From positions 62,001-126,000 of IMG/VR virus record IMGVR_UViG_3300042923_000474: a DNA stretch of 64,000 nucleotides, one strand, 5' to 3'. Below are positions 32,245 to 43,274 of this stretch, in pieces. The notes under the pieces are model-generated. The model was not told the origin of the DNA. It made no database searches and saw nothing but the letters and a program-made list of their open reading frames with translations. Position 1 is the first letter of the stretch; each line of letters opens with the position of its first letter. The translations under genes were made by a program, and so were the position numbers.

Positions 32245-32718
32245 TTACTTGATCTTGGAAAGCACCATGGAGATGAATTCCTCTAGGGATTTGGCGATGA
32301 TCTGCCGTTTAGGTTTACCGGTGCGGAAAAGGATGATCTGACCCCGTCGCCCACCGGCTGCTGGCGCTTGGTCAATGCAGTAATAGTCTGCCCCATTGAT
32401 TTTGGCAAACGGAATCCACGCAGGGTTCCACCAGGTAGCTGCGACCCCAGAGTCCGGCACAGCTTTCTTGTCGTCGGTCTTGCCATCGGTGTAGGTCTCG
32501 TTGAAACCTTTCCAGAGGGTCAACACCTTCTGATGAGGCAGGAATACAATCTTGCCCCCTTCAGTCTTGATGGACATCCCGTTGGATTGTTCCAGCGCAG
32601 AGCGCAGGTCCTTGGGCATGTCGATCTTTGCTTTCTGTTCGTTCGCATCGGCCTTGGCCTTATCGAGTTCAGGTCCCTTTTTTACACCTTCCGGCAGGGA
32701 TGACAAGTTAACGGCCAT
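32245..32718 (-). CDS. SMI1/KNR4 (SUKH) family immunity-like protein
   Basis: MPKDLRSALEQSNG, WWNPAWIPFA, DYYCIDQAP..GG..GQIILF, IAKSLEEFI. Confidence 0.85.
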   Translation of the reverse strand: MAVNLSSLPEGVKKGPELDKAKADANEQKAKIDMPKDLRSALEQSNGMSIKTEGGKIVFLPHQKVLTLWKGFNETYTDGKTDDKKAVPDSGVAATWWNPAWIPFAKINGADYYCIDQAPAAGGRRGQIILFRTGKPKRQIIAKSLEEFISMVLSKIK

Positions 32719-33926: not shown

Positions 33927-34625
33927 TTAACGTGGTTGCCTGAAAGATTGCTTGGATCTGTGGCGTATTACTGAGCCCCGCATCTTCTTGGTACGGTTCT
34001 GCCGCTTACGGTTGCGCAGGATGTCCAGCGTGACCATTTGCAACAGTACATCACAGATGAGGTTGTGTGCAGCATCCGCGCGCTCTGGAGACATCCCTAC
34101 GACGTACTGTTGCATGGTGTCTGCATCCATCACAATGTCGCCCGGCAGTGGACCATCAGGACGACCCAACGCATCACCACCGTGCCACATCGGAGGAACC
34201 TTGACGTTGCGCAGGGGTTCTGGGATGTCGACAACGACGGGGCCAAAGGCATTTAAGAAGGTGGGTTCAAAGTCCGGCGTAGATTTTCTTTCACCACGCA
34301 ACATTGTTTGAACACTGGGTTGCAGGTGACTGTCGCACAGGCCGAAGCTTAAAACGTCTTCGCCTTTACCTAGGCCATTGACCAAACCGACCTCGGAGAT
34401 AACTGCGTAGGCTTGACCTTTGTGCTGGGTCATGTTCACCTCGTAGACCTTACCGTTAGACAACTCCAACGGTGCCTGGATGATGTCTAACAGCTCCTTT
34501 GGGAACTCGTAGAGGTGCCGGGCAATACCTGTCTTCTCCTCGACAGGTTCAGCAACCTTCGGAGCGTCACCTATCCGGGTGATCTCCATGGCGGTTATGT
34601 CGCACAGCTTATTGCCTTTTTCCAT
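33927..34625 (-). CDS. Hypothetical protein with an Arg/Lys-rich C-terminus
   Basis: Start moved to ATG 34625; overlap-coupled. Confidence 0.65.
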   Translation of the reverse strand: MEKGNKLCDITAMEITRIGDAPKVAEPVEEKTGIARHLYEFPKELLDIIQAPLELSNGKVYEVNMTQHKGQAYAVISEVGLVNGLGKGEDVLSFGLCDSHLQPSVQTMLRGERKSTPDFEPTFLNAFGPVVVDIPEPLRNVKVPPMWHGGDALGRPDGPLPGDIVMDADTMQQYVVGMSPERADAAHNLICDVLLQMVTLDILRNRKRQNRTKKMRGSVIRHRSKQSFRQPR

Positions 34626-35220
34626 GATTGATATCTCGAATGGCTTGTTGTAAAGGTGGGAGGATCTCTTGTTGAGGTCCCATGTAATCGCAATGGCCGA
34701 TAGTTCCCACATTGACAATGGGTTTCTTCAGCCCGGCCAGAGGATCTTCGTACATACCACCCCACGCCTTGTACGAGACGGTGTAGCGATCACGCCATGG
34801 CTCGATAGCGATCACGTTGGCAGCGATCATGTAGCGAGTCATGGCCTCTGCATCACGCAGGTGCACGATGTGGTCATGGAGAGGATCTGCCAGCGGCCCA
34901 CCGAACATGGGTTCCATGCTGCACTTGGTGTGCCCGGTGTAATACAAGATGCGCTCATTGGGATCACGCTCGTCTACGACCCGCCTGGTCCTTAGGTCGT
35001 AACCACGCGCACGATAAACCGAGTGACGGTGTGCATTGGGTTCAACGACCGATTGGAGTGGAGAGTTCTCCAACATCTCCACATGGGCTGCATGGATTTT
35101 GGATTGGTAGAATTCATTGCGGGCTTTATGCCACTCGTCCATGGCTTGCTCGTGGGCCAATTCCCCTTTCTCAAAGAGGCGATGCCAGCTGCTCTTCTTG
35201 AAGCTTACAAAGGTATCCAT
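34609..35220 (-). CDS. Hypothetical protein with an EF-Tu-like peptide KPIVNVGTIGHCD
   Basis: 203 aa; motif encoded at 34687-34725. Confidence 0.7.
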   Translation of the reverse strand: MDTFVSFKKSSWHRLFEKGELAHEQAMDEWHKARNEFYQSKIHAAHVEMLENSPLQSVVEPNAHRHSVYRARGYDLRTRRVVDERDPNERILYYTGHTKCSMEPMFGGPLADPLHDHIVHLRDAEAMTRYMIAANVIAIEPWRDRYTVSYKAWGGMYEDPLAGLKKPIVNVGTIGHCDYMGPQQEILPPLQQAIRDINHGKRQ

Positions 35221-36353
35221 TGATCTTCTACCCGATAAGAGAAGGAAGGTTCGCCAGCTCTAACCTTAACCTGCACGCGGTTTGGGCCGACAGCCTTAAT
35301 GACCTCACGATCAAAGAGGCATTCCAATTGACCCTCAGTTACGAGGGGGTGATTGCCATGTTCCTTAACCACCTCATTCCATGCAGTGATCGCTGCAAAC
35401 TTCAGCTCTTCGGTACTCATAGGCGCCTTGACCGACGGCATGATTATCGAGGAACCTGTGTCGATGCGACGGAAGTGGTGACCTTCACGAGGCCTGATGC
35501 CCGGCAGGCTGTATACCCACTCGCCATCGCCAGCCTTGAACTTGAAGCTGACCTTGTCGTACTTCTCATCCTTCCAGATGGCCTCAGCGGAAACCATCTC
35601 TGGTCCAACTTCACGCCAGAAGTCTTGGAACTTGGTTGCCACGACGGTGTGAGGTGGGCTTTGGTGATGGGCGAAGTACACCATGGTGAAGCTCCACGCT
35701 TTCTGAGCCAGTTCTTCATACGTGGCCAATGAGCTGGGTGTGGGATATCGTGAGGAAGGCTCTACCGTGACCGTAGGGAAGTAGATCTCAGCGAACTGTG
35801 CCGGCTTCCCGCCCAGATATTCATCCAGCGAGATCGGACGCTCAATCTCTTTCCACTCACCCCAGACCAGTTGCTCGTAACGCACACCCATGCCGACGAA
35901 ACGAACACGAGCCAGCTCGGAGCCAAACTTCTCACGAGCAGCCCGTGCAAATTCAGCCTGCATGTGCTCGCCGTAGCGGTCGCGGTTAGCGGAGTAAATG
36001 CGGCTCCATGTTTCATCGCACCATTCCCACGTTGGGCCGTCTACCATCTCTTCCCTGTAGTAGTCGCCGATGGAGAGGGCCGGTGGGAACAGAGGAGGGG
36101 TGCCGATCGCCTTTTTCTCAATCTCTGACCACGTCAGCATGTCGCCGTCCATATCGCCCGGTGTCTTGTCAGGATACTGAGGCAGTGTACGGATGGCATC
36201 CCATGCGTAACGTTCAGCTTTCGCGCCGAGGATACGTGTGAAGAAGTATTCTGGATTAACCCTGACTTCTTCCAGAATGAGTTCCTTCTGCTCCTGAGTC
36301 AGGTTCGGCGAGAAAGGGTCAAGCGCCTTTACGTTCTTGTTAATCAGTTCCAT
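35205..36353 (-). CDS. Hypothetical protein with a terminase-N-like first 40 aa
   Basis: ALDPFSPNLTQEQKELILEEVRVNPEYFFTRIL; start moved to ATG 36353. Confidence 0.7.
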   Translation of the reverse strand: MELINKNVKALDPFSPNLTQEQKELILEEVRVNPEYFFTRILGAKAERYAWDAIRTLPQYPDKTPGDMDGDMLTWSEIEKKAIGTPPLFPPALSIGDYYREEMVDGPTWEWCDETWSRIYSANRDRYGEHMQAEFARAAREKFGSELARVRFVGMGVRYEQLVWGEWKEIERPISLDEYLGGKPAQFAEIYFPTVTVEPSSRYPTPSSLATYEELAQKAWSFTMVYFAHHQSPPHTVVATKFQDFWREVGPEMVSAEAIWKDEKYDKVSFKFKAGDGEWVYSLPGIRPREGHHFRRIDTGSSIIMPSVKAPMSTEELKFAAITAWNEVVKEHGNHPLVTEGQLECLFDREVIKAVGPNRVQVKVRAGEPSFSYRVEDQWIPL

Positions 36354-36729
36354 GCTGTTCCCCCACAGTTGTAATGTCAGTAAGTTGGTAAGCTTCTTTC
36401 CCGTCGACGCAGACCGAGATAGCATTGAACGGTTCGCCCACAGGGATCGCAGTGATGCGCCCATGGATCTCCACCGGCAGCTTAACGGAGTTAGCCTTCT
36501 CCACAATTGCTCGGGCCAGTGTGACGTGAATGTCTTCGCCTTCCAGTTGGACATTGGTTTCATCGTCCAATGCCAAGTCAACTACCTGACAGGCAATCCA
36601 CAAGCGTTGACTGGTCGCCAAGGCCTCTGGGTTGCTGTCGTACATGGTGGACAGAGTCGGGTACTGCATTGCGCGCAGCATCTCGGTGGCTTGATCTGCT
36701 TCAACCTGAGGGATGAATTGCTTTACCAT
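36340..36729 (-). CDS. Hypothetical protein (129 aa)
   Basis: GGAG RBS. Confidence 0.7.
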   Translation of the reverse strand: MVKQFIPQVEADQATEMLRAMQYPTLSTMYDSNPEALATSQRLWIACQVVDLALDDETNVQLEGEDIHVTLARAIVEKANSVKLPVEIHGRITAIPVGEPFNAISVCVDGKEAYQLTDITTVGEQHGTD

Positions 36730-37827: not shown

Positions 37828-38121
37828 TCAGGAGTGCAGGATTTCCAGCACGTGATCCACCAGATCCTGGCCCTCTTTCAGCTCAGGTGTCATGGGGTAC
37901 AAATTCTCAGCCTTGGTACGGTTCAGGCGGAACTGCTTGAACACAGGAGGACCCTCGCCGTACCACTGACCTTTATCGGCTACCATGACCGAGTAGCGTC
38001 CTTGCTTGGCGCCGAGGTGATGTACACGCTTATCACCGATCATGACTTTGTTGGCGTTGAAGAAGCAAAGACGCAGGTGGTCTGTGGGTACCGAAGTACC
38101 CATCACGTTAAGCCCACTCAT
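37828..38121 (-). CDS. Hypothetical protein (97 aa)
   Basis: Start moved to ATG 38121, TAATG overlap with the upstream stop. Confidence 0.6.
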   Translation of the reverse strand: MSGLNVMGTSVPTDHLRLCFFNANKVMIGDKRVHHLGAKQGRYSVMVADKGQWYGEGPPVFKQFRLNRTKAENLYPMTPELKEGQDLVDHVLEILHS

Positions 38122-38411
38122 TACGAAATCTCGACGTCGGCCAGTTTCAGGAAGCGGTGGTACCAGTACGACCAGTTGTGACGGCATTCCAGACGAATGG
38201 CTTCACGCTGCTCTTCGGTAACATCCGGGCTGAAGGGGTCCAGCTCTTTCAGGGCAGGGTTGACGTAGTACAGGCCTTCCGGTACCTGGATGAGTTTAGA
38301 AGCAGCTGCACGCTGCTCCTGAGTCATCTCCTCGTAACGGCGAGCCAACTTGATGCTCTCATCGTTTTCGAGGAAGGTGGCGTCAAACTTAAATTCACTA
38401 TCGGTATTCAT
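38121..38411 (-). CDS. Stand-alone 96-aa protein resembling the N-terminus of phiKZ-like large terminase
   Basis: NDESIKLARRYEEM...NPALKELDPFSPDVTEEQREAIRLECRHNWSYW; TAATG-coupled to SbcC. Confidence 0.65.
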   Translation of the reverse strand: MNTDSEFKFDATFLENDESIKLARRYEEMTQEQRAAASKLIQVPEGLYYVNPALKELDPFSPDVTEEQREAIRLECRHNWSYWYHRFLKLADVEIS

Positions 38412-40891
38412 TAACTAATCTCCACATGCAGATTGGCGTCGGCTGGACGCGTGATATTTCGGTCATCCAATACCACGAACTCGGCTTGGTTAAATGAACC
38501 ATAGACCGACGAATAGTGACTGACCATGAACAACTGACTGAACCGACCCTGCTCCATCAGCGACTGAATGTAATTGACCAGACGCTCGCGGTGCTCATCG
38601 TCAAAGTCCTTACCGAACTCATCGGCCAGCAATGGGAAGTCGTGTAAACCTGTCAACTCCATCACCACCAACTTGAACACCCAGTCAATCATCGAGACCT
38701 GACCGGTAGACCCATCGGCAATATCGCCATCGGGGTTCGGTTGGTTGTTGACAATGATCGGGAGTTTCACGTTGAGGGTAGCGCCTTCCTCCAAGACCGC
38801 ATCAATCTCCATCGGGTACGTCCACACCATCGCAATGTGTTCGTTGATCATCCCAGTGAAGTGACGAATGAAGTTCTTGGTGATGTCTGCCACAATGCCA
38901 TGAGTAGGTGACAGGGCGCGAGCCAGTAACTTGTACGACGTGAAGCGAGACTCCACATCAATCAGCTCACTGCGAGAGTTCTCGTAACGGGCTTGTAGGT
39001 CACGGTAACGCTGGGTGGATTGGTGCAGGGTAGCCAGACGGGTCATCACCTTGCCACGCACCTGATCCAGATGCTCATCACGCAGTGCATCTTCCACTTG
39101 CTTACGCAGGGAGTTGAACGATTCAATGGCGTTGGACATCTCCATCATCAGAGTATCCAACTTCTCCAAGTGATAGAGTTCCTCACTGAGTTGGGCCATT
39201 GCGATCGTTGCCTGGTTCACCGCCTCGTACTTGTCGTGCAGCTCACCTTCGAGCAGGTCAGCACGCTGCAGCAGGAACTTAGGATCACCACTGTTCTTGA
39301 TCAGCTCCAGACGCGATGTGAGGTCCTTTAGCTCTGCAGTGATACGCTTGGCGTAAGCAGTGTCCAAAAGCTTTCTAATCGTGTCTGAGAGCGCCACAGA
39401 GATCATGGCAGGGTTAGTGCGTACATAACCTCGTTCACTCACCATCTCCCAGAAAGCAGACAACACTTTGGAGCCTTCACGAATACGAGCCAACTCACCG
39501 AGCTTACGGCTGTAGTCATCAAAGTCTGAGATGTGGACAGACAACTCCTCCATCTCCCGCTGAGCCTGCTCCACCTTTTGACGACGACTGTCCAACCGCG
39601 CCTGAGTTTGCTCAACCAACCCAGCAGGCCAGCCCGGCTTGAAGGTGTGTTCACACTTAGGGCAGTTGGTATCAGCGGTGTGGGTCGCATGTTCCAGCGT
39701 CGCCTCCATCTTGGAGATGACGTTGTTGGATTCAATGCACCACTGACTGAGTTTGGTGTAGCGCTCCATCCTTTCAGAGTGAGTACCACGAGCGTACAGT
39801 CCTTCGGTGTTGGCAGGGATCGTGACGCACAGTTCAGTCAGTTGCTGCTGGATACCTTCCGCTACGGCCAGCAACGCTTCAGGAGACTCGCTACCGCATT
39901 CGTAGAGACTGCCTTGAGCTTGGATACCCGCCAGCTCTTCTTCGATCTGTGCAACGCGTGTAGTGAGCTGAGAAGGATCGTCCAAAGACTCACGACCTAC
40001 GTGACGGATCAGCGACTGGATACCTTCCAGTGCTTTCTCATGGGTGTCACACTCCCCACGGGTCTTCATCATCCGATCACGCAGCGAGGAGATCTCGCCA
40101 TCCACCTGCTCTTTGGTCTTGCCACCGTACTTGGAGTTGTCACGAATGACCGTCTCCGCCACGATGGTTTGAGAGCGCTGGTGAATGGTCTTGTACGCGT
40201 CCTGCATGCGCTTGATCAGACCACTGGAATCGGCTACCGACATTCGGCCATTCAAAGCGTGGTTGAGTTCAATGCCCAACTGCTTGAGTTGAGTGACCTC
40301 ATCATCCGTGTCCTTGAAGTCATCCTCCATAGAACGGATCTCATCGGACATGTCATGTGTCAGGTCCAGCAGGTACTTCATCGTACCCTGCATGTCACGG
40401 GCTTTGACACGAAACTGTTCGAACAGACCCAACACGTAATCAAAGTCAGTCCCTGAGATACGCATCATCCACTCACGGCGTTTGGAGGGACTCATCTGAG
40501 ACAGGCGTGCTCGTCCTGTCAGAATGTCACTCACCTCTTGGGTCAACCCCACGTAACGCTCTACCAACTCTTTCTGAGTGGCCTGAGTGTTGCCGTCGTT
40601 CAGCTGAACACCGTTCATGTTAAAGGTGTGGTGACCGGCCTTAACGTTATAGACGCTGATCAGGTTGAAGTTTGAATCGTTGTGTTCGAAGAAGTATTCG
40701 ACACCACCACCTTTGTGGAAACGGCTACCGTTAGGCACAAGGTTCAGAATCGCTTGTAGCAAAGAACTTTTACCTGCCCCGTTACTGCCCAGCACAATTT
40801 GTTCCTGTGACTGCGGCGTATATTCGAAGCGCCAAATACCCGCTAGGTCAAAAGACTTGTAGCCGGTTAGGATGATTTTGAGAAGACGCAT
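38411..40891 (-). CDS. sbcC: SbcC/Rad50-like SMC ATPase
   Basis: Walker A GSNGAGKS, coiled coils, central CPKC zinc hook, signature GSTGQ, Walker B LLADE, H-loop MVSH. Confidence 0.92.
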   Translation of the reverse strand: MRLLKIILTGYKSFDLAGIWRFEYTPQSQEQIVLGSNGAGKSSLLQAILNLVPNGSRFHKGGGVEYFFEHNDSNFNLISVYNVKAGHHTFNMNGVQLNDGNTQATQKELVERYVGLTQEVSDILTGRARLSQMSPSKRREWMMRISGTDFDYVLGLFEQFRVKARDMQGTMKYLLDLTHDMSDEIRSMEDDFKDTDDEVTQLKQLGIELNHALNGRMSVADSSGLIKRMQDAYKTIHQRSQTIVAETVIRDNSKYGGKTKEQVDGEISSLRDRMMKTRGECDTHEKALEGIQSLIRHVGRESLDDPSQLTTRVAQIEEELAGIQAQGSLYECGSESPEALLAVAEGIQQQLTELCVTIPANTEGLYARGTHSERMERYTKLSQWCIESNNVISKMEATLEHATHTADTNCPKCEHTFKPGWPAGLVEQTQARLDSRRQKVEQAQREMEELSVHISDFDDYSRKLGELARIREGSKVLSAFWEMVSERGYVRTNPAMISVALSDTIRKLLDTAYAKRITAELKDLTSRLELIKNSGDPKFLLQRADLLEGELHDKYEAVNQATIAMAQLSEELYHLEKLDTLMMEMSNAIESFNSLRKQVEDALRDEHLDQVRGKVMTRLATLHQSTQRYRDLQARYENSRSELIDVESRFTSYKLLARALSPTHGIVADITKNFIRHFTGMINEHIAMVWTYPMEIDAVLEEGATLNVKLPIIVNNQPNPDGDIADGSTGQVSMIDWVFKLVVMELTGLHDFPLLADEFGKDFDDEHRERLVNYIQSLMEQGRFSQLFMVSHYSSVYGSFNQAEFVVLDDRNITRPADANLHVEIS

Positions 40892-40956
40892 GGGTAGGCT
40901 TTCCGTATTCGTAGGCATTCGCTAATAAGTGCCCCCAATCTGTTAGGAGATACACG

Positions 40957-42659: not shown

Positions 42660-43274
42660 TTACACAGGGATGCCGGCTTGGATAATCAACTGCTCGTAGC
42701 GCTGACGAATCGACTTCTCAGTGTTGAGTTGTCGTTGCAGATCTTCCACTTTGGCAAAGAACGTTTGACGGTTCTCGACAGCTGCCAAGCGGTTCGCTTC
42801 GAAAGACGCGGCCTGTTCAGGCGTCAGGATACCGGTCATGGGAGCGGTGTACATGGTGACAGTGATGTCAGTCAAACCTGTCAACGCTGTAAACAACTCC
42901 TTGACTTCTTCCTGCACGTAGGTCAAATCCAACGTATCAGGAATGACCCCCACATCCAGACCCATCACCATGCGACTGAAACCAGACGTCACGGTAGTCG
43001 GTGCAACCTTGATGTAGGTGGTCGGTACCAGAACGTCTGCGTAGTCATCAGACTTCAGCGTCACCAGCGAGGTGCCATTGACCCGGTCACTGTTGTACTG
43101 CTCAAGCGTCAGTCCGTAAGGCTTGTAGTAAGCCTCAAAGATGTTGATGCCCTCAGCCAACACTTTACCGAAGTCGTTGATGCCGTTACAGGTGTAGCTT
43201 ACATCGTCTTTGATCAACGTGCGGTACGGGTCGAGCAACTCCCATTTACCGCGTGCGTGCATGATCGGTGTCAT
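42660..43274 (-). CDS. Putative virion structural protein (204 aa)
   Basis: Co-transcribed with the 455-aa gene; C-terminal coiled coil. Confidence 0.6.
   Translation of the reverse strand: MTPIMHARGKWELLDPYRTLIKDDVSYTCNGINDFGKVLAEGINIFEAYYKPYGLTLEQYNSDRVNGTSLVTLKSDDYADVLVPTTYIKVAPTTVTSGFSRMVMGLDVGVIPDTLDLTYVQEEVKELFTALTGLTDITVTMYTAPMTGILTPEQAASFEANRLAAVENRQTFFAKVEDLQRQLNTEKSIRQRYEQLIIQAGIPV

What the first reader, a model, noticed from the sequence alone, without database searches (positions are those of the whole stretch)
34687..34725. EF-Tu N-terminal/P-loop peptide embedded in a non-GTPase ORF
Seen: KPIVNVGTIGHCD near the C-terminus of the 203-aa ORF 34609-35220. Knowledge: bacterial EF-Tu reads KPHVNVGTIGHVDHGKT, so 11 of 13 positions are identical. 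The catalytic GKT and the rest of the G domain are absent. The stretch also overlaps the C-terminal half of the plant-sensed elf18 epitope. Inference: a linear mimic of EF-Tu, or a captured fragment under selection.
Basis: partly seen in the sequence, partly recalled or inferred. Interest (0 to 1): 0.75.

Follow-up and report, generated by a model that had tools for sequence, protein, structure and literature searches.

The report
Dead EF-Tu/EF-G peptides in phage protein
A small jumbo-phage protein keeps, under strong selection, near-exact copies of the two short peptides that flank the GTP-binding loop of the bacterial translation factors EF-Tu and EF-G, but not the loop itself, and the same peptide pair turns up in other unrelated phage proteins, which suggests an undescribed host-derived module of unknown function.

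Summary
KPIVNVGTIGHCD (window 34687-34725, minus strand) is residues 166-178 of the 203-aa ORF 34609-35220. It matches EF-Tu at 11 of 13 positions. No GKT follows it, and the 231.7-kb jumbo-phage genome encodes no G domain.

It is not chance. It is the only such match in the genome, and codon-shuffled genomes reach at most 7/13. VGTIGH.D is invariant in all 11 homologues, while the codons vary only at synonymous positions.

The same ORF holds a second host-like block. 'ERILYYTG' and its flanks match the EF-G N-terminus and nothing else in the PDB. So the protein carries both flanks of a translational-GTPase P-loop, with the loop destroyed.

The pair recurs in other scaffolds. One unrelated phage family (7/7 members) ends ...VNVGTIGH.DQERILYYTG, with the GKT excised. 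EF-Tu N-terminal fragments occur in at least eight phage ORF classes.

'Captured fragment under selection' is supported. 'Mimic' is plausible but untested: both AlphaFold models were poor and the EF-Tu/EF-Ts co-fold gave no answer. The elf18 link is very unlikely to matter. My best guess is a non-catalytic, sequence-specific module aimed at the translation-factor machinery.

The parts
34609..35220 (-). g203, the finding ORF (203 aa, P0001). It belongs to a small family restricted to a clade of phiKZ-like jumbo phages.
   Evidence: There are 11 homologues in 5.8 billion and 1.84 billion protein libraries, all on phage-like contigs, and no Pfam family.
34684..34725 (-). Block 2 core, KPIVNVGTIGHCDY (residues 166-179): the EF-Tu beta1 / start-of-P-loop peptide. 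V169, V171, G172, T173, I174, G175, H176, D178 and Y179 are invariant in A1.
   Evidence: Only synonymous variation is seen.
34612..34683 (-). C-terminal tail MGPQQEILPPLQQAIRDINHGKRQ. A replaced P-loop (no GKT) is followed by a conserved helix; L190, Q192, I194, R195 and N198 are invariant.
   Evidence: AF2 predicts a helix at 189-198. There is no significant similarity to EF-Tu alpha1. A possible intermediate is the L020 protein, GHRDHPKALTPNTIKATIKEF.
34885..35004 (-). Block 1 (residues 73-112), ..RRVVDERDPNERILYYTGHTKCSMEPMFGGPLAD: the EF-G N-terminal-like module. Its core ERILYYTG is residues 89-96, at 34933-34956.
   Evidence: All 29 PDB hits of the block-1 profile are EF-G or mitochondrial EF-G at residues ~25-40. 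z = 3.6-7.1 against a tool-derived EF-G N-terminus and ~0 against EF-Tu. Most homologues also have 'GIS' aligned to EF-G 'NIGISAH'; the window's own copy lacks it.
35026..35220 (-). N-terminal extension (residues 1-65), found only in P0001 and P0002. In a related phage its first 40 residues are a separate 72-aa ORF.
   Evidence: g203 residues 1-40 match L005:5786-5905.
38411..40918 (-). g835, an SbcC/Rad50-like ABC ATPase and first gene of the co-oriented gene string that contains the finding.
   Evidence: phrog_77 E 1e-73. Pfam SMC_N E 5e-8, below cutoff. Its homologue is gp207 of Erwinia phage Stratton, which lies upstream of that phage's own EF-Tu-motif ORF.
35205..36353 (-). g382, the upstream neighbour (16-nt overlap with g203). 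Its N-terminus carries a ~40-aa motif shared with the phage's own large terminase.
   Evidence: A relative in run X6 shows 240 nt in place of ~1.1 kb here (joint 35258->36358).
33927..34625 (-). g232, the downstream neighbour (start overlaps the g203 stop by 17 nt). Function unknown; no match in the relatives L013, L045 and L089 (L045 has little room for it).
32245..32718 (-). g157, a SUKH/SMI1-KNR4 immunity-type protein and last conserved gene of the string.
   Evidence: Pfam PF09346 E 5e-15. Syntenic in L005, L013 and L089.

Best explanation
WHAT IT IS (shown). g203 belongs to a small accessory-protein family of a clade of phiKZ-like jumbo phages. Its two conserved cores are near-exact copies of the two flanks of the P-loop of bacterial translational GTPases. 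Block 1 resembles the EF-G N-terminus: (GIS)...ERILYYTG....E...G....D, that is beta1, helix alpha1 and the start of switch I. Block 2 resembles the EF-Tu N-terminus: KP.VNVGTIGH.D, that is beta1 and the first P-loop residues. In both blocks the GKT of the P-loop is replaced. G2 and G4 are absent, as is an EF-type G3 (only a chance-level 'DYMG'), so the protein cannot be a GTPase. Both peptides are held by strong purifying selection on the protein, not on the DNA.

ORIGIN (inferred). The blocks are fragments of fusA- and tuf-type genes, taken from a host (where fusA sits directly before tufA) or from a phage-borne copy, then captured and exapted. Full-length EF-G- and EF-Tu-type ORFs exist on large viral contigs.

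HOW IT WORKS (inferred, unproven). The two peptides act together as a non-catalytic module whose function depends on sequence identity with the host factors. That would be a P-loop-less pseudo-G-domain core that engages something which also deals with EF-Tu and EF-G: the ribosomal factor-binding site, the factors themselves during folding, or an enzyme or defence protein that acts on them. I put about 0.85 on 'captured translational-GTPase fragments under selection' and about 0.35 on 'function depends on mimicry of the host factors'. The overall confidence given is a blend of the two.
For: Motif identity and statistics.

Specificity: 59/59 PDB hits of the family profile are EF-Tu N-termini, and 29/29 hits of the block-1 profile are EF-G N-termini. 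The rest of the protein matches neither factor, apart from one stray z = 3.6 (P0007's middle region against EF-G).

Conservation: VGTIGH.D and R-I-L-x-Y-x-G are invariant in 12 family members at 30-83% identity. Every fixed motif codon shows synonymous variation. The five strain differences inside the motif are all at third positions and synonymous.

The two peptides travel together:
- An unrelated 323-383-aa family ends ..HVNVGTIGH.DQER[IVM]L[FY]YTG.. in 7/7 members. The order is canonical and the GKT is exactly excised.
- A third scaffold reads NERVLRYTG, 7 aa, then VNVGTIGHVDW.
- ERILYYTG occurs in IMG/VR only in full-length EF-G ORFs, in this family and in one small ORF.

The EF-Tu peptide recurs in many phage ORFs, often with a ruined P-loop: GKP, SRS, HPKA, HGIS.

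Positional analogy: Erwinia phage Stratton gp214, which is EF-Tu-like, lies downstream of the SbcC-like homologue of g835.

Both AF2 models leave the motif at pLDDT <50. That is compatible with a segment that folds on a partner, but also with a thin alignment.
Against: No partner is identified. The co-fold with E. coli EF-Tu and EF-Ts returned 'no answer'.

The mimicked segments are largely buried core elements of the G domain, not a surface that a partner would normally see.

The published EF-Tu-directed defences I found act elsewhere. Lit cleaves G59-I60, the type IV Thoeris caspase cleaves after R45 and R59 (10.1101/2024.10.24.620036), and Avs7 binds domains II/III (PMC13581612).

Two distant family members read ILYYGGRQVGK(T/R), which is a regular Walker A. 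That reading makes 'RILYY' a beta strand of a generic P-loop ATPase rather than the EF-G helix.

Each short match has only a marginal database E-value on its own: 1e-3 for EF-Tu and 0.12 for EF-G.

The family has only 12 members, all from metagenomes, and the host is unknown.
Confidence: 0.45

Rival explanations
1. Historical relic used as scaffold. The two beta-loop-alpha units were captured from translational-GTPase genes but now only build a small alpha/beta domain. That domain would do something unrelated to translation, for example phosphate, nucleotide or nucleic-acid binding in the SbcC-like recombination/nuclease gene string. No mimicry is involved.
For: The gene sits in a conserved co-oriented string headed by an SbcC/Rad50-like ATPase. 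The mimicked segments are core, not surface, elements. The conserved H, D, Y/W and R/K after the strand could line a ligand site. The minimal members (95-121 aa) consist of little more than strand-loop-helix twice.
Against: A mere scaffold gives no reason for near-identity with the host factors to persist while the rest of the protein drifts to 30% identity. It also does not explain why the same two peptides are kept in unrelated scaffolds and in both orders. AF2 finds no confident fold.
Confidence: 0.3
2. Degenerate P-loop ATPase of the AAA/STAND or terminase type. 'RILYY-GGRQVGKT' is beta1 plus Walker A, and 'VNVGTIGH.D' is the next strand, possibly Walker-B-like (hhhhD, with DxxG in 'DYMG'). 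Under this reading the likeness to EF-Tu and EF-G is coincidental.
For: P0014 has a perfect GxxxxGKT after four hydrophobic residues, and P0013 a near-perfect one. Two other small ORFs, L021 and L082, combine WGRQTGKT with a C-terminal VNVGTIGHCDW. Language-model neighbours of P0014 are AAA_14/AAA_16/STAND clusters, score 0.90. There are weak phrog_2 (E 0.09) and AAA_14 (E 0.2) hits. AF2 draws 'YYTGH' as a strand.
Against: hhalign of the family against 25 large terminases gives probability 0.1%. Ten of 12 members have no Walker A. It would take two independent coincidences, 9/9 with Thermus EF-G and up to 12/13 with EF-Tu, both landing on the same region of the same protein superfamily. EF-G itself reads YYTGRIHKIGE, so 'YYGGRQVGKT' may be a secondary pseudo-Walker-A.
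Confidence: 0.1
3. Decoy substrate or inhibitor for defence proteases that cut EF-Tu, such as Lit or the type IV Thoeris caspase.
For: EF-Tu is a recurrent target or cofactor of anti-phage defence (PMC13581612; 10.1101/2024.10.24.620036). A different phage ORF family (L086) does carry 'EQARGITIKS', the Lit/caspase site region, fused to the motif. The neighbourhood holds a SUKH immunity-type gene.
Against: The known cleavage sites (R45, R59, G59-I60) lie outside the mimicked residues 9-21, and g203 has no RGITI. The Thoeris caspase is promiscuous for Arg.
Confidence: 0.05
4. Chance resemblance in a fast-evolving ORFan, with no function attached to the peptide.
For: The match is short, and single-hit database E-values are marginal.
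Against: shuffles; invariance; synonymous-only variation; recurrence.
Confidence: 0.02
5. Plant-immunity-related epitope: elf18/EFR recognition or interference with it.
For: KPHVNVGTIG is the C-terminal part of elf18 (sequence). Some other carriers of the motif infect plant pathogens (Erwinia).
Against: The N-terminal acetyl-SKEKFER part is absent (per my memory of the elf18 literature it is needed by EFR; not checked here). The peptide is internal, in an intracellular phage protein, and the source is a soil metagenome. The same motif occurs in phages of Vibrio and Aggregatibacter.
Confidence: 0.01

Closest known systems
EF-Tu N-terminus (beta1 and the start of the G1/P-loop, residues 9-23)
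   Same: 11/13 identical in the window's copy (KPIVNVGTIGHCD) and 12/13 in most homologues (KPYVNVGTIGHVD). Profile-profile probability is 97.6% over 16 columns.
   Different: There is no GKT and no G2 or G4 (only a chance-level 'DYMG' where G3 would be), and no domains II/III. The peptide sits near the C-terminus of a 95-220-aa protein. Pfam GTP_EFTU does not match.
EF-G N-terminus (beta1, alpha1 and the start of switch I, residues ~12-51)
   Same: ERILYYTG(R) is identical to Thermus EF-G. 'GIS' and the later E, G and D positions line up with one 1-residue gap. All 29 PDB hits are EF-G-type.
   Different: The P-loop AGKTTTT is replaced by .EPDPN. In this family the block comes before, not after, the EF-Tu-like strand. 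The window's own copy lacks the 'GIS' strand.
Small phage ORFs that are EF-Tu N-terminal fragments: PHROG 27465 (e.g. Vibrio phage henriette 12B8 VPDG_00052) and PHROG 12626/28329 (Erwinia phage Stratton gp214)
   Same: They carry the same VNVGTIGH.D peptide, often with a ruined P-loop (YGKP, HSRS). Stratton gp214 occupies an analogous place downstream of the SbcC-like gene.
   Different: Those ORFs keep 30-55 residues of EF-Tu-like sequence, and henriette passes the Pfam GTP_EFTU cutoff. They have no EF-G-like block and no similarity to g203 outside the motif. g203 hits their profiles only at E 0.01-0.04 over 14 residues.
The L087/P0139-P0145 family of jumbo-phage proteins (unnamed)
   Same: Both peptides are conserved at the C-terminus..HVNVGTIGH.DQERILYYTG.., with the GKT missing.
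   Different: The order is canonical and the peptides are directly adjacent. The remaining ~300 residues are unrelated to g203, and the genomic context differs.
Pseudo-enzymes / P-loop beta-(loop)-alpha prototypes, and aggregation-seeding peptides that copy a target's own strand (both from my own knowledge of the literature, not checked here)
   Same: They share the concept of a catalytically dead remnant of an NTPase element, or of a copied core strand whose action depends on sequence identity with the target.
   Different: Nothing here shows ligand binding or co-aggregation. These are analogies, not tests.

Membership tests
Translational GTPase (Pfam GTP_EFTU, PF00009) | G1 Walker A GxxxxGK[ST] | tested here: not met
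   g203 reads GTIGHCDYMGPQQ. No family member has GKT after the EF-Tu-like strand. Block 1 has .EPDPN in place of AGKTTTT.
Translational GTPase (Pfam GTP_EFTU, PF00009) | G2 (RGITI), G3 (DxPGH) and G4 (NKxD) motifs, and a ~190-aa G domain recognised by the profile | tested here: not met
   There is no PF00009 match for g203 at E<=0.1, for four other family members scanned at E<=10 (P0003, P0012-P0014), or in the genome. RGITI, DTPGH and DCPGH are absent from the six-frame translation. 'DYMG' fits DxxG, but only by pattern.
PHROG 27465 / 12626 (phage EF-Tu N-terminal fragment ORFs) | A significant full-length match to the family profile | tested here: not met
   g203 scores E 0.042 over residues 166-179 only. 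The best family member scores 0.009.
Large terminase / ASCE P-loop ATPase | Walker A, Walker B and profile similarity | tested here: not met
   Walker A is present only in P0014, and degenerate in P0013. hhalign against 25 TerL gives probability 0.1%. phrog_2 scores E 0.09 for one member.
elf18 / EFR epitope | N-terminal acetylated SKEKFERTKPHVNVGTIG at a free N-terminus | tested here: not met
   Only the KP.VNVGTIG part is present, at residues 166-175 of 203, preceded by ..DPLAGLK. Recognition by EFR was not testable here.
g203 family itself (new, unnamed) | P.P[NH][ED]RIL[YH]Y.G ... [VP][NT]VGTIGH.D[YW] ... L[QR]Q[AT]IR..N, and a place in the SbcC-like ... SUKH gene string | tested here: met

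The most novel reading that the evidence does not exclude
The two P-loop-flank peptides form a portable phage module whose action needs sequence identity with the host's EF-Tu and EF-G core segments. Possible modes are pairing or co-folding with nascent or nicked host factors, seeding their co-aggregation, or occupying a site that reads both factors. That would be a new class of host-takeover or counter-defence device, built from P-loop-less pseudo-G-domain pieces and reinvented in several phage lineages.
Probability: 0.15. Interest if true: 0.85.

Novelty: new variant of a known kind. Interest (0 to 1): 0.66.

Why it matters
Phages are known to borrow host genes and to mimic host molecules. 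A conserved module made only of the two flanks of the GTP-binding loop of EF-Tu and EF-G has not, to my knowledge, been described. Here the loop is removed, and the pair is kept in both orders in unrelated proteins.

If function depends on identity with the host factors, this would point to a new way for phages to touch the translation apparatus, or the defence systems built around EF-Tu. It would also give a function to several PHROG families now marked 'unknown'.

If it is only a scaffold, it is still a clean natural example of exaptation of NTPase fragments. Either way it can be tested in culturable phages that carry relatives: Pseudomonas phage HRDY3 and Erwinia phage Stratton.

Tried and rejected
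- Megablast of the locus against GenBank phages gave no match.
- Terminase-fragment idea. It was prompted by weak phrog_2 hits in neighbouring ORFs and by the Walker A in P0014. For the family it is rejected by hhalign, probability 0.1%. The TerL-like 40-aa motif in g96 and g382 is real but separate.
- Two AlphaFold2 runs gave mean pLDDT 55.7 for the full protein with 9 sequences and 49.7 for the minimal 95-aa member with 12. The motif was <50 in both, so no fold search was justified.
- Co-fold with E. coli EF-Tu and EF-Ts gave 'no answer', which is evidence neither way.
- ESM Atlas leads were GIY-YIG for P0001 at 0.83 and AAA/STAND for P0014 at 0.90. The first is at noise level; the second only reflects the Walker A.
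- The rest of the protein was compared with full-length EF-G and EF-Tu, to test for a fusA-tufA deletion product. Outside the two blocks nothing matched, apart from one stray z = 3.6 for P0007.
- tRNA co-capture (thrT-tufB type) as the source of phage EF-Tu fragments: a tRNA gene sits directly upstream in only 3 of 41 loci, all with an intact GKT, and none in this window.
- Literature: I found no paper on phage EF-Tu/EF-G peptide mimics. The known EF-Tu-directed defences act at other residues.
- DNA-level element (homing or attachment site): rejected, because the codons differ freely.

Full report
SETTING. The window is bases 62,001-126,000 of a 231,724-bp IMG/VR virus record with direct terminal repeats. 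GC content is 54% and there are no tRNA genes in the window. A 1,159-aa ORF matches virion proteins of phiKZ-like Pseudomonas jumbo phages, the best being pPa_SNUABM_DT01 at 49%. Public runs that hold the sequence are soil metagenomes. The genome is therefore an uncultured phiKZ-like jumbo phage with an unknown host.

OBSERVATION. The ORF 34609-35220 (-) is 203 aa and ends ...GLKKPIVNVGTIGHCDYMGPQQEILPPLQQAIRDINHGKRQ. I obtained real EF-Tu and EF-G sequences from a Salmonella contig that happens to sit in the phage collection. No GKT follows. Pfam GTP_EFTU matches neither the ORF nor anything in the genome.

The match is not chance:
- In the six-frame translation of the whole genome it is the only 13-mer with >=8 identities, and 30 codon-shuffled genomes reach at most 7.
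- Local alignment of the C-terminal block to the EF-Tu N-terminus gives z = 7-12.7, with 0 of 3000 shuffles reaching it.
- A profile-profile comparison with 25 EF-Tu N-termini gives 97.6% probability over 16 columns.

CONSERVATION. Searches of 5.8 billion and 1.84 billion proteins found only 11 relatives, all on phage-like contigs. In the 12-sequence alignment, V171, G172, T173, I174, G175, H176 and D178 are invariant, while mean column identity is 39%. Most homologues read KPYVNVGTIGHVD, which is 12/13 with EF-Tu. Every fixed codon of the motif shows synonymous variation between homologues. In contigs of related strains from three other runs, the five differences inside the motif (34693, 34696, 34702, 34705, 34717) all fall on third codon positions and are synonymous. 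Selection therefore acts on the peptide, not on a DNA site.

A SECOND HOST-LIKE BLOCK. The other invariant part of the family is P.PNERILYYTG.
- A profile of this block hits 29 PDB sequences at E<=10. All are EF-G or mitochondrial EF-G, at residues ~25-40. 'ERILYYTGR' is identical in Thermus EF-G.
- Against the tool-derived EF-G N-terminus ([37 protein letters not shown]) the block scores z = 3.6-7.1. Against EF-Tu it scores z ~ 0.
- The best alignment takes in the upstream 'GIS' with a single 1-residue gap: GISARL-VIEPDPNERILYYTG against [22 protein letters not shown].
- By my own reading of the ungapped alignment, the family-invariant E103 and G108 fall on the E and G of EF-G 'GEVH.G'.
- Nothing else in the protein resembles either factor.

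The protein thus holds an EF-G-type and an EF-Tu-type 'strand, dead P-loop, helix' unit. In other words, it carries the two flanks of a translational-GTPase P-loop without the loop. The EF-G-like block comes first, which is the order of fusA and tufA in the bacterial str operon. I could not show that the protein arose by a single fusA-tufA deletion.

THE PAIR RECURS ELSEWHERE. A degenerate DNA pattern for VNVGTIGH.D found 74 loci in IMG/VR.
- About 27 are full-length EF-Tu-type ORFs.
- The rest are short or non-GTPase ORFs of at least eight classes, many with a ruined P-loop.
- GenBank phages show the same. Vibrio phage henriette 12B8 has ..KPHVNVGTIGHVDYGKP.., and Erwinia phage Stratton gp214 has ..HVNVGTIGHVDHSRS...

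Most telling are other proteins that carry both peptides:
- A family of 323-383-aa proteins (L087, P0139-P0145), unrelated to g203 elsewhere, ends ..FPHVNVGTIGH.DQER[IVM]L[FY]YTGKSHSGR in 7 of 7 members. Both peptides are adjacent, in canonical order, with the GKT exactly excised.
- A 170-aa ORF on another 231.8-kb contig reads NERVLRYTG, seven residues, then VNVGTIGHVDW.
- ERILYYTG itself occurs in IMG/VR only in six full-length EF-G ORFs (on 20-359-kb contigs), in this family and in one small ORF.

That the two peptides are kept together, in either order and in unrelated scaffolds, argues that they work as a unit and that their exact sequence matters.

CONTEXT. g203 lies in a co-oriented gene string on the minus strand:
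- g835, an SbcC/Rad50-like ATPase (phrog_77, E 1e-73).
- g96, g276 and g129.
- g382.
- g203.
- g232, g204 and g148.
- g157, a SUKH/SMI1-KNR4 protein.

Start and stop codons overlap on both sides of g203. The order is kept in four relatives, including the distant one that carries P0014. Both immediate neighbours are dispensable in some relatives, so there is no obligate phage partner.

In Erwinia phage Stratton, the homologue of g835 (gp207; 24% identity, E 8e-63) lies 1.6 kb upstream of gp214, that phage's EF-Tu-like ORF. Two distant jumbo-phage clades thus carry an EF-Tu-motif protein at an analogous place.

MECHANISM. What is shown is the anatomy, the selection and the recurrence. What is not shown is any activity or partner. 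Both AlphaFold2 models are poor, with the motif below pLDDT 50. The co-fold with E. coli EF-Tu and EF-Ts gave 'no answer'.

I commit to the following reading. The two peptides form a non-catalytic module whose function depends on identity with the host factors. Four things are hard to explain otherwise:
- Near-identity persists while everything else drifts.
- The catalytic GKT is removed each time.
- Both an EF-Tu-type and an EF-G-type peptide are used.
- The pair has been assembled in several scaffolds.

The ribosome is the one partner common to EF-Tu and EF-G. From my memory of ribosome-factor structures (not checked here), the H and D of 'GH.D' lie next to the sarcin-ricin loop in the bound factors. 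This is inference.

A decoy role for the known EF-Tu-cutting defences is unlikely, because they act at R45, R59 and G59-I60. Avs7 binds domains II/III.

The main rival is that the captured units are now only a scaffold for a small alpha/beta domain serving the SbcC-like gene string.

A third reading is a degenerate P-loop ATPase. It rests on the perfect Walker A of P0014, ILYYGGRQVGKT, and on L021/L082, which combine WGRQTGKT with VNVGTIGHCDW. Against it stand hhalign with terminases (probability 0.1%), the absence of a Walker A in 10 of 12 members, and the need for two coincidences on the same superfamily.

COMPARISON AND NOVELTY. The protein is not a translational GTPase: G1, G2, G4 and the profile match all fail, and G3 is matched only by a chance-level 'DYMG'. 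It is not a member of the PHROG families of EF-Tu fragments, since only the motif matches (E ~0.01-0.04). It is not a terminase fragment. I found no paper that describes such peptides in phages.

I class it as a new variant of a known kind, namely host-gene fragment capture and possible mimicry. There is a 15% chance that it marks a truly new type of module.

VERDICT. Interest 0.66.

Noticed in passing
window 38121-38411 (-) and 35205-36353 (-); real terminase at G000:C1 ~154.7-157 kb (L010): Two ORFs of the same gene string (g96 and the N-terminus of g382) carry a ~40-aa motif, LDPFSP.[LV]T.EQ.E.I..E.R.NP.YF. It is shared with the N-terminal part of the phage's own large terminase, GVDPHDPNLDEQTKVKIWRECMENPWYF (phrog_2 E 5e-5 and 2e-4). 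This is a second case of a short peptide module copied into small proteins at this locus.
   Followed up: partly
Erwinia phage Stratton KX397373.1 173789-174679 (L091 6290-7180); also L071, L029, L034: The EF-Tu-fragment ORF gp214 sits directly after gp213, a GNAT annotated as ribosomal-protein-alanine acetyltransferase. The pair is kept down to 45-52% identity. E. coli RimI is the enzyme that acetylates the EF-Tu N-terminus (PMC9079301), so the pair could be an enzyme and a pseudo-substrate.
   Followed up: partly
L065 3543-5219 (-); L037 3050-3634 (-) and L079: On ~35-60-kb viral contigs (possibly temperate phages), complete proteins start with an EF-Tu N-terminal fragment. One is a large terminase (Pfam Terminase_6N 3e-9 plus GTP_EFTU 6e-7, reading VNVGTIGHVDNGKTT). 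Another is a YbcO-type nuclease (PF07102 4e-44 plus GTP_EFTU 1e-4).
   Followed up: partly
L018, L019, L023, L026, L030, L049, L063, L064, L067 and others; L094-L099: Full-length EF-Tu-type ORFs sit on IMG/VR contigs of up to 532 kb, and full-length EF-G-type ORFs on contigs of 20-359 kb. They are either phage-borne translation factors or host contamination. They are possible donors of the fragments.
   Followed up: no
L086 2459-2908 (+) and L036 4624-4995 (-): Another small phage family joins the motif to other G-domain signatures. L086 reads ..EQARGITIKSDNVNVGTIGHPDWYY.., which is the G2 'RGITI' (the Lit cleavage site region) followed by the strand. L036 reads ..HVNVGTIGHIDYGKQ...
   Followed up: no
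Pseudomonas phage HRDY3 PQ015379.1, L004 1384-1842 (+): An unannotated ORF next to the DNA polymerase gene reads ..GKPHINVGTVGHIDWGLHPLAQALDRV... It looks like a distant relative of the g203 C-terminal module in a cultured phage.
   Followed up: partly
P0014 (L089 3138-3719) and P0013 (L007): The positional orthologues in a more distant phage have a perfect Walker A (ILYYGGRQVGKT), or a near-perfect one, right after 'ERILYY'. The other ten members do not.
   Followed up: partly
window 35026-35220 (-): The first ~40 residues of g203 correspond to a separate 72-aa ORF in the related 230,984-bp contig, so g203 is a fusion of two neighbouring genes.
   Followed up: yes
window 35258-36358: In a relative present in run X6, about 1.1 kb (most of g382) is replaced by 240 other bases, while g203 is kept (joints table).
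   Followed up: no
window 34868-35009 and 36165-36339: A run labelled 'RNA?' (X10) holds two read-length contigs, 94-96% identical to g203 and to the g129/g382 junction, with adapter remnants at their ends. This is not enough to claim transcription.
   Followed up: no
window 42660-43274 (-): A 204-aa ORF is a full-length DUF7194 protein (E 7e-51).
   Followed up: no
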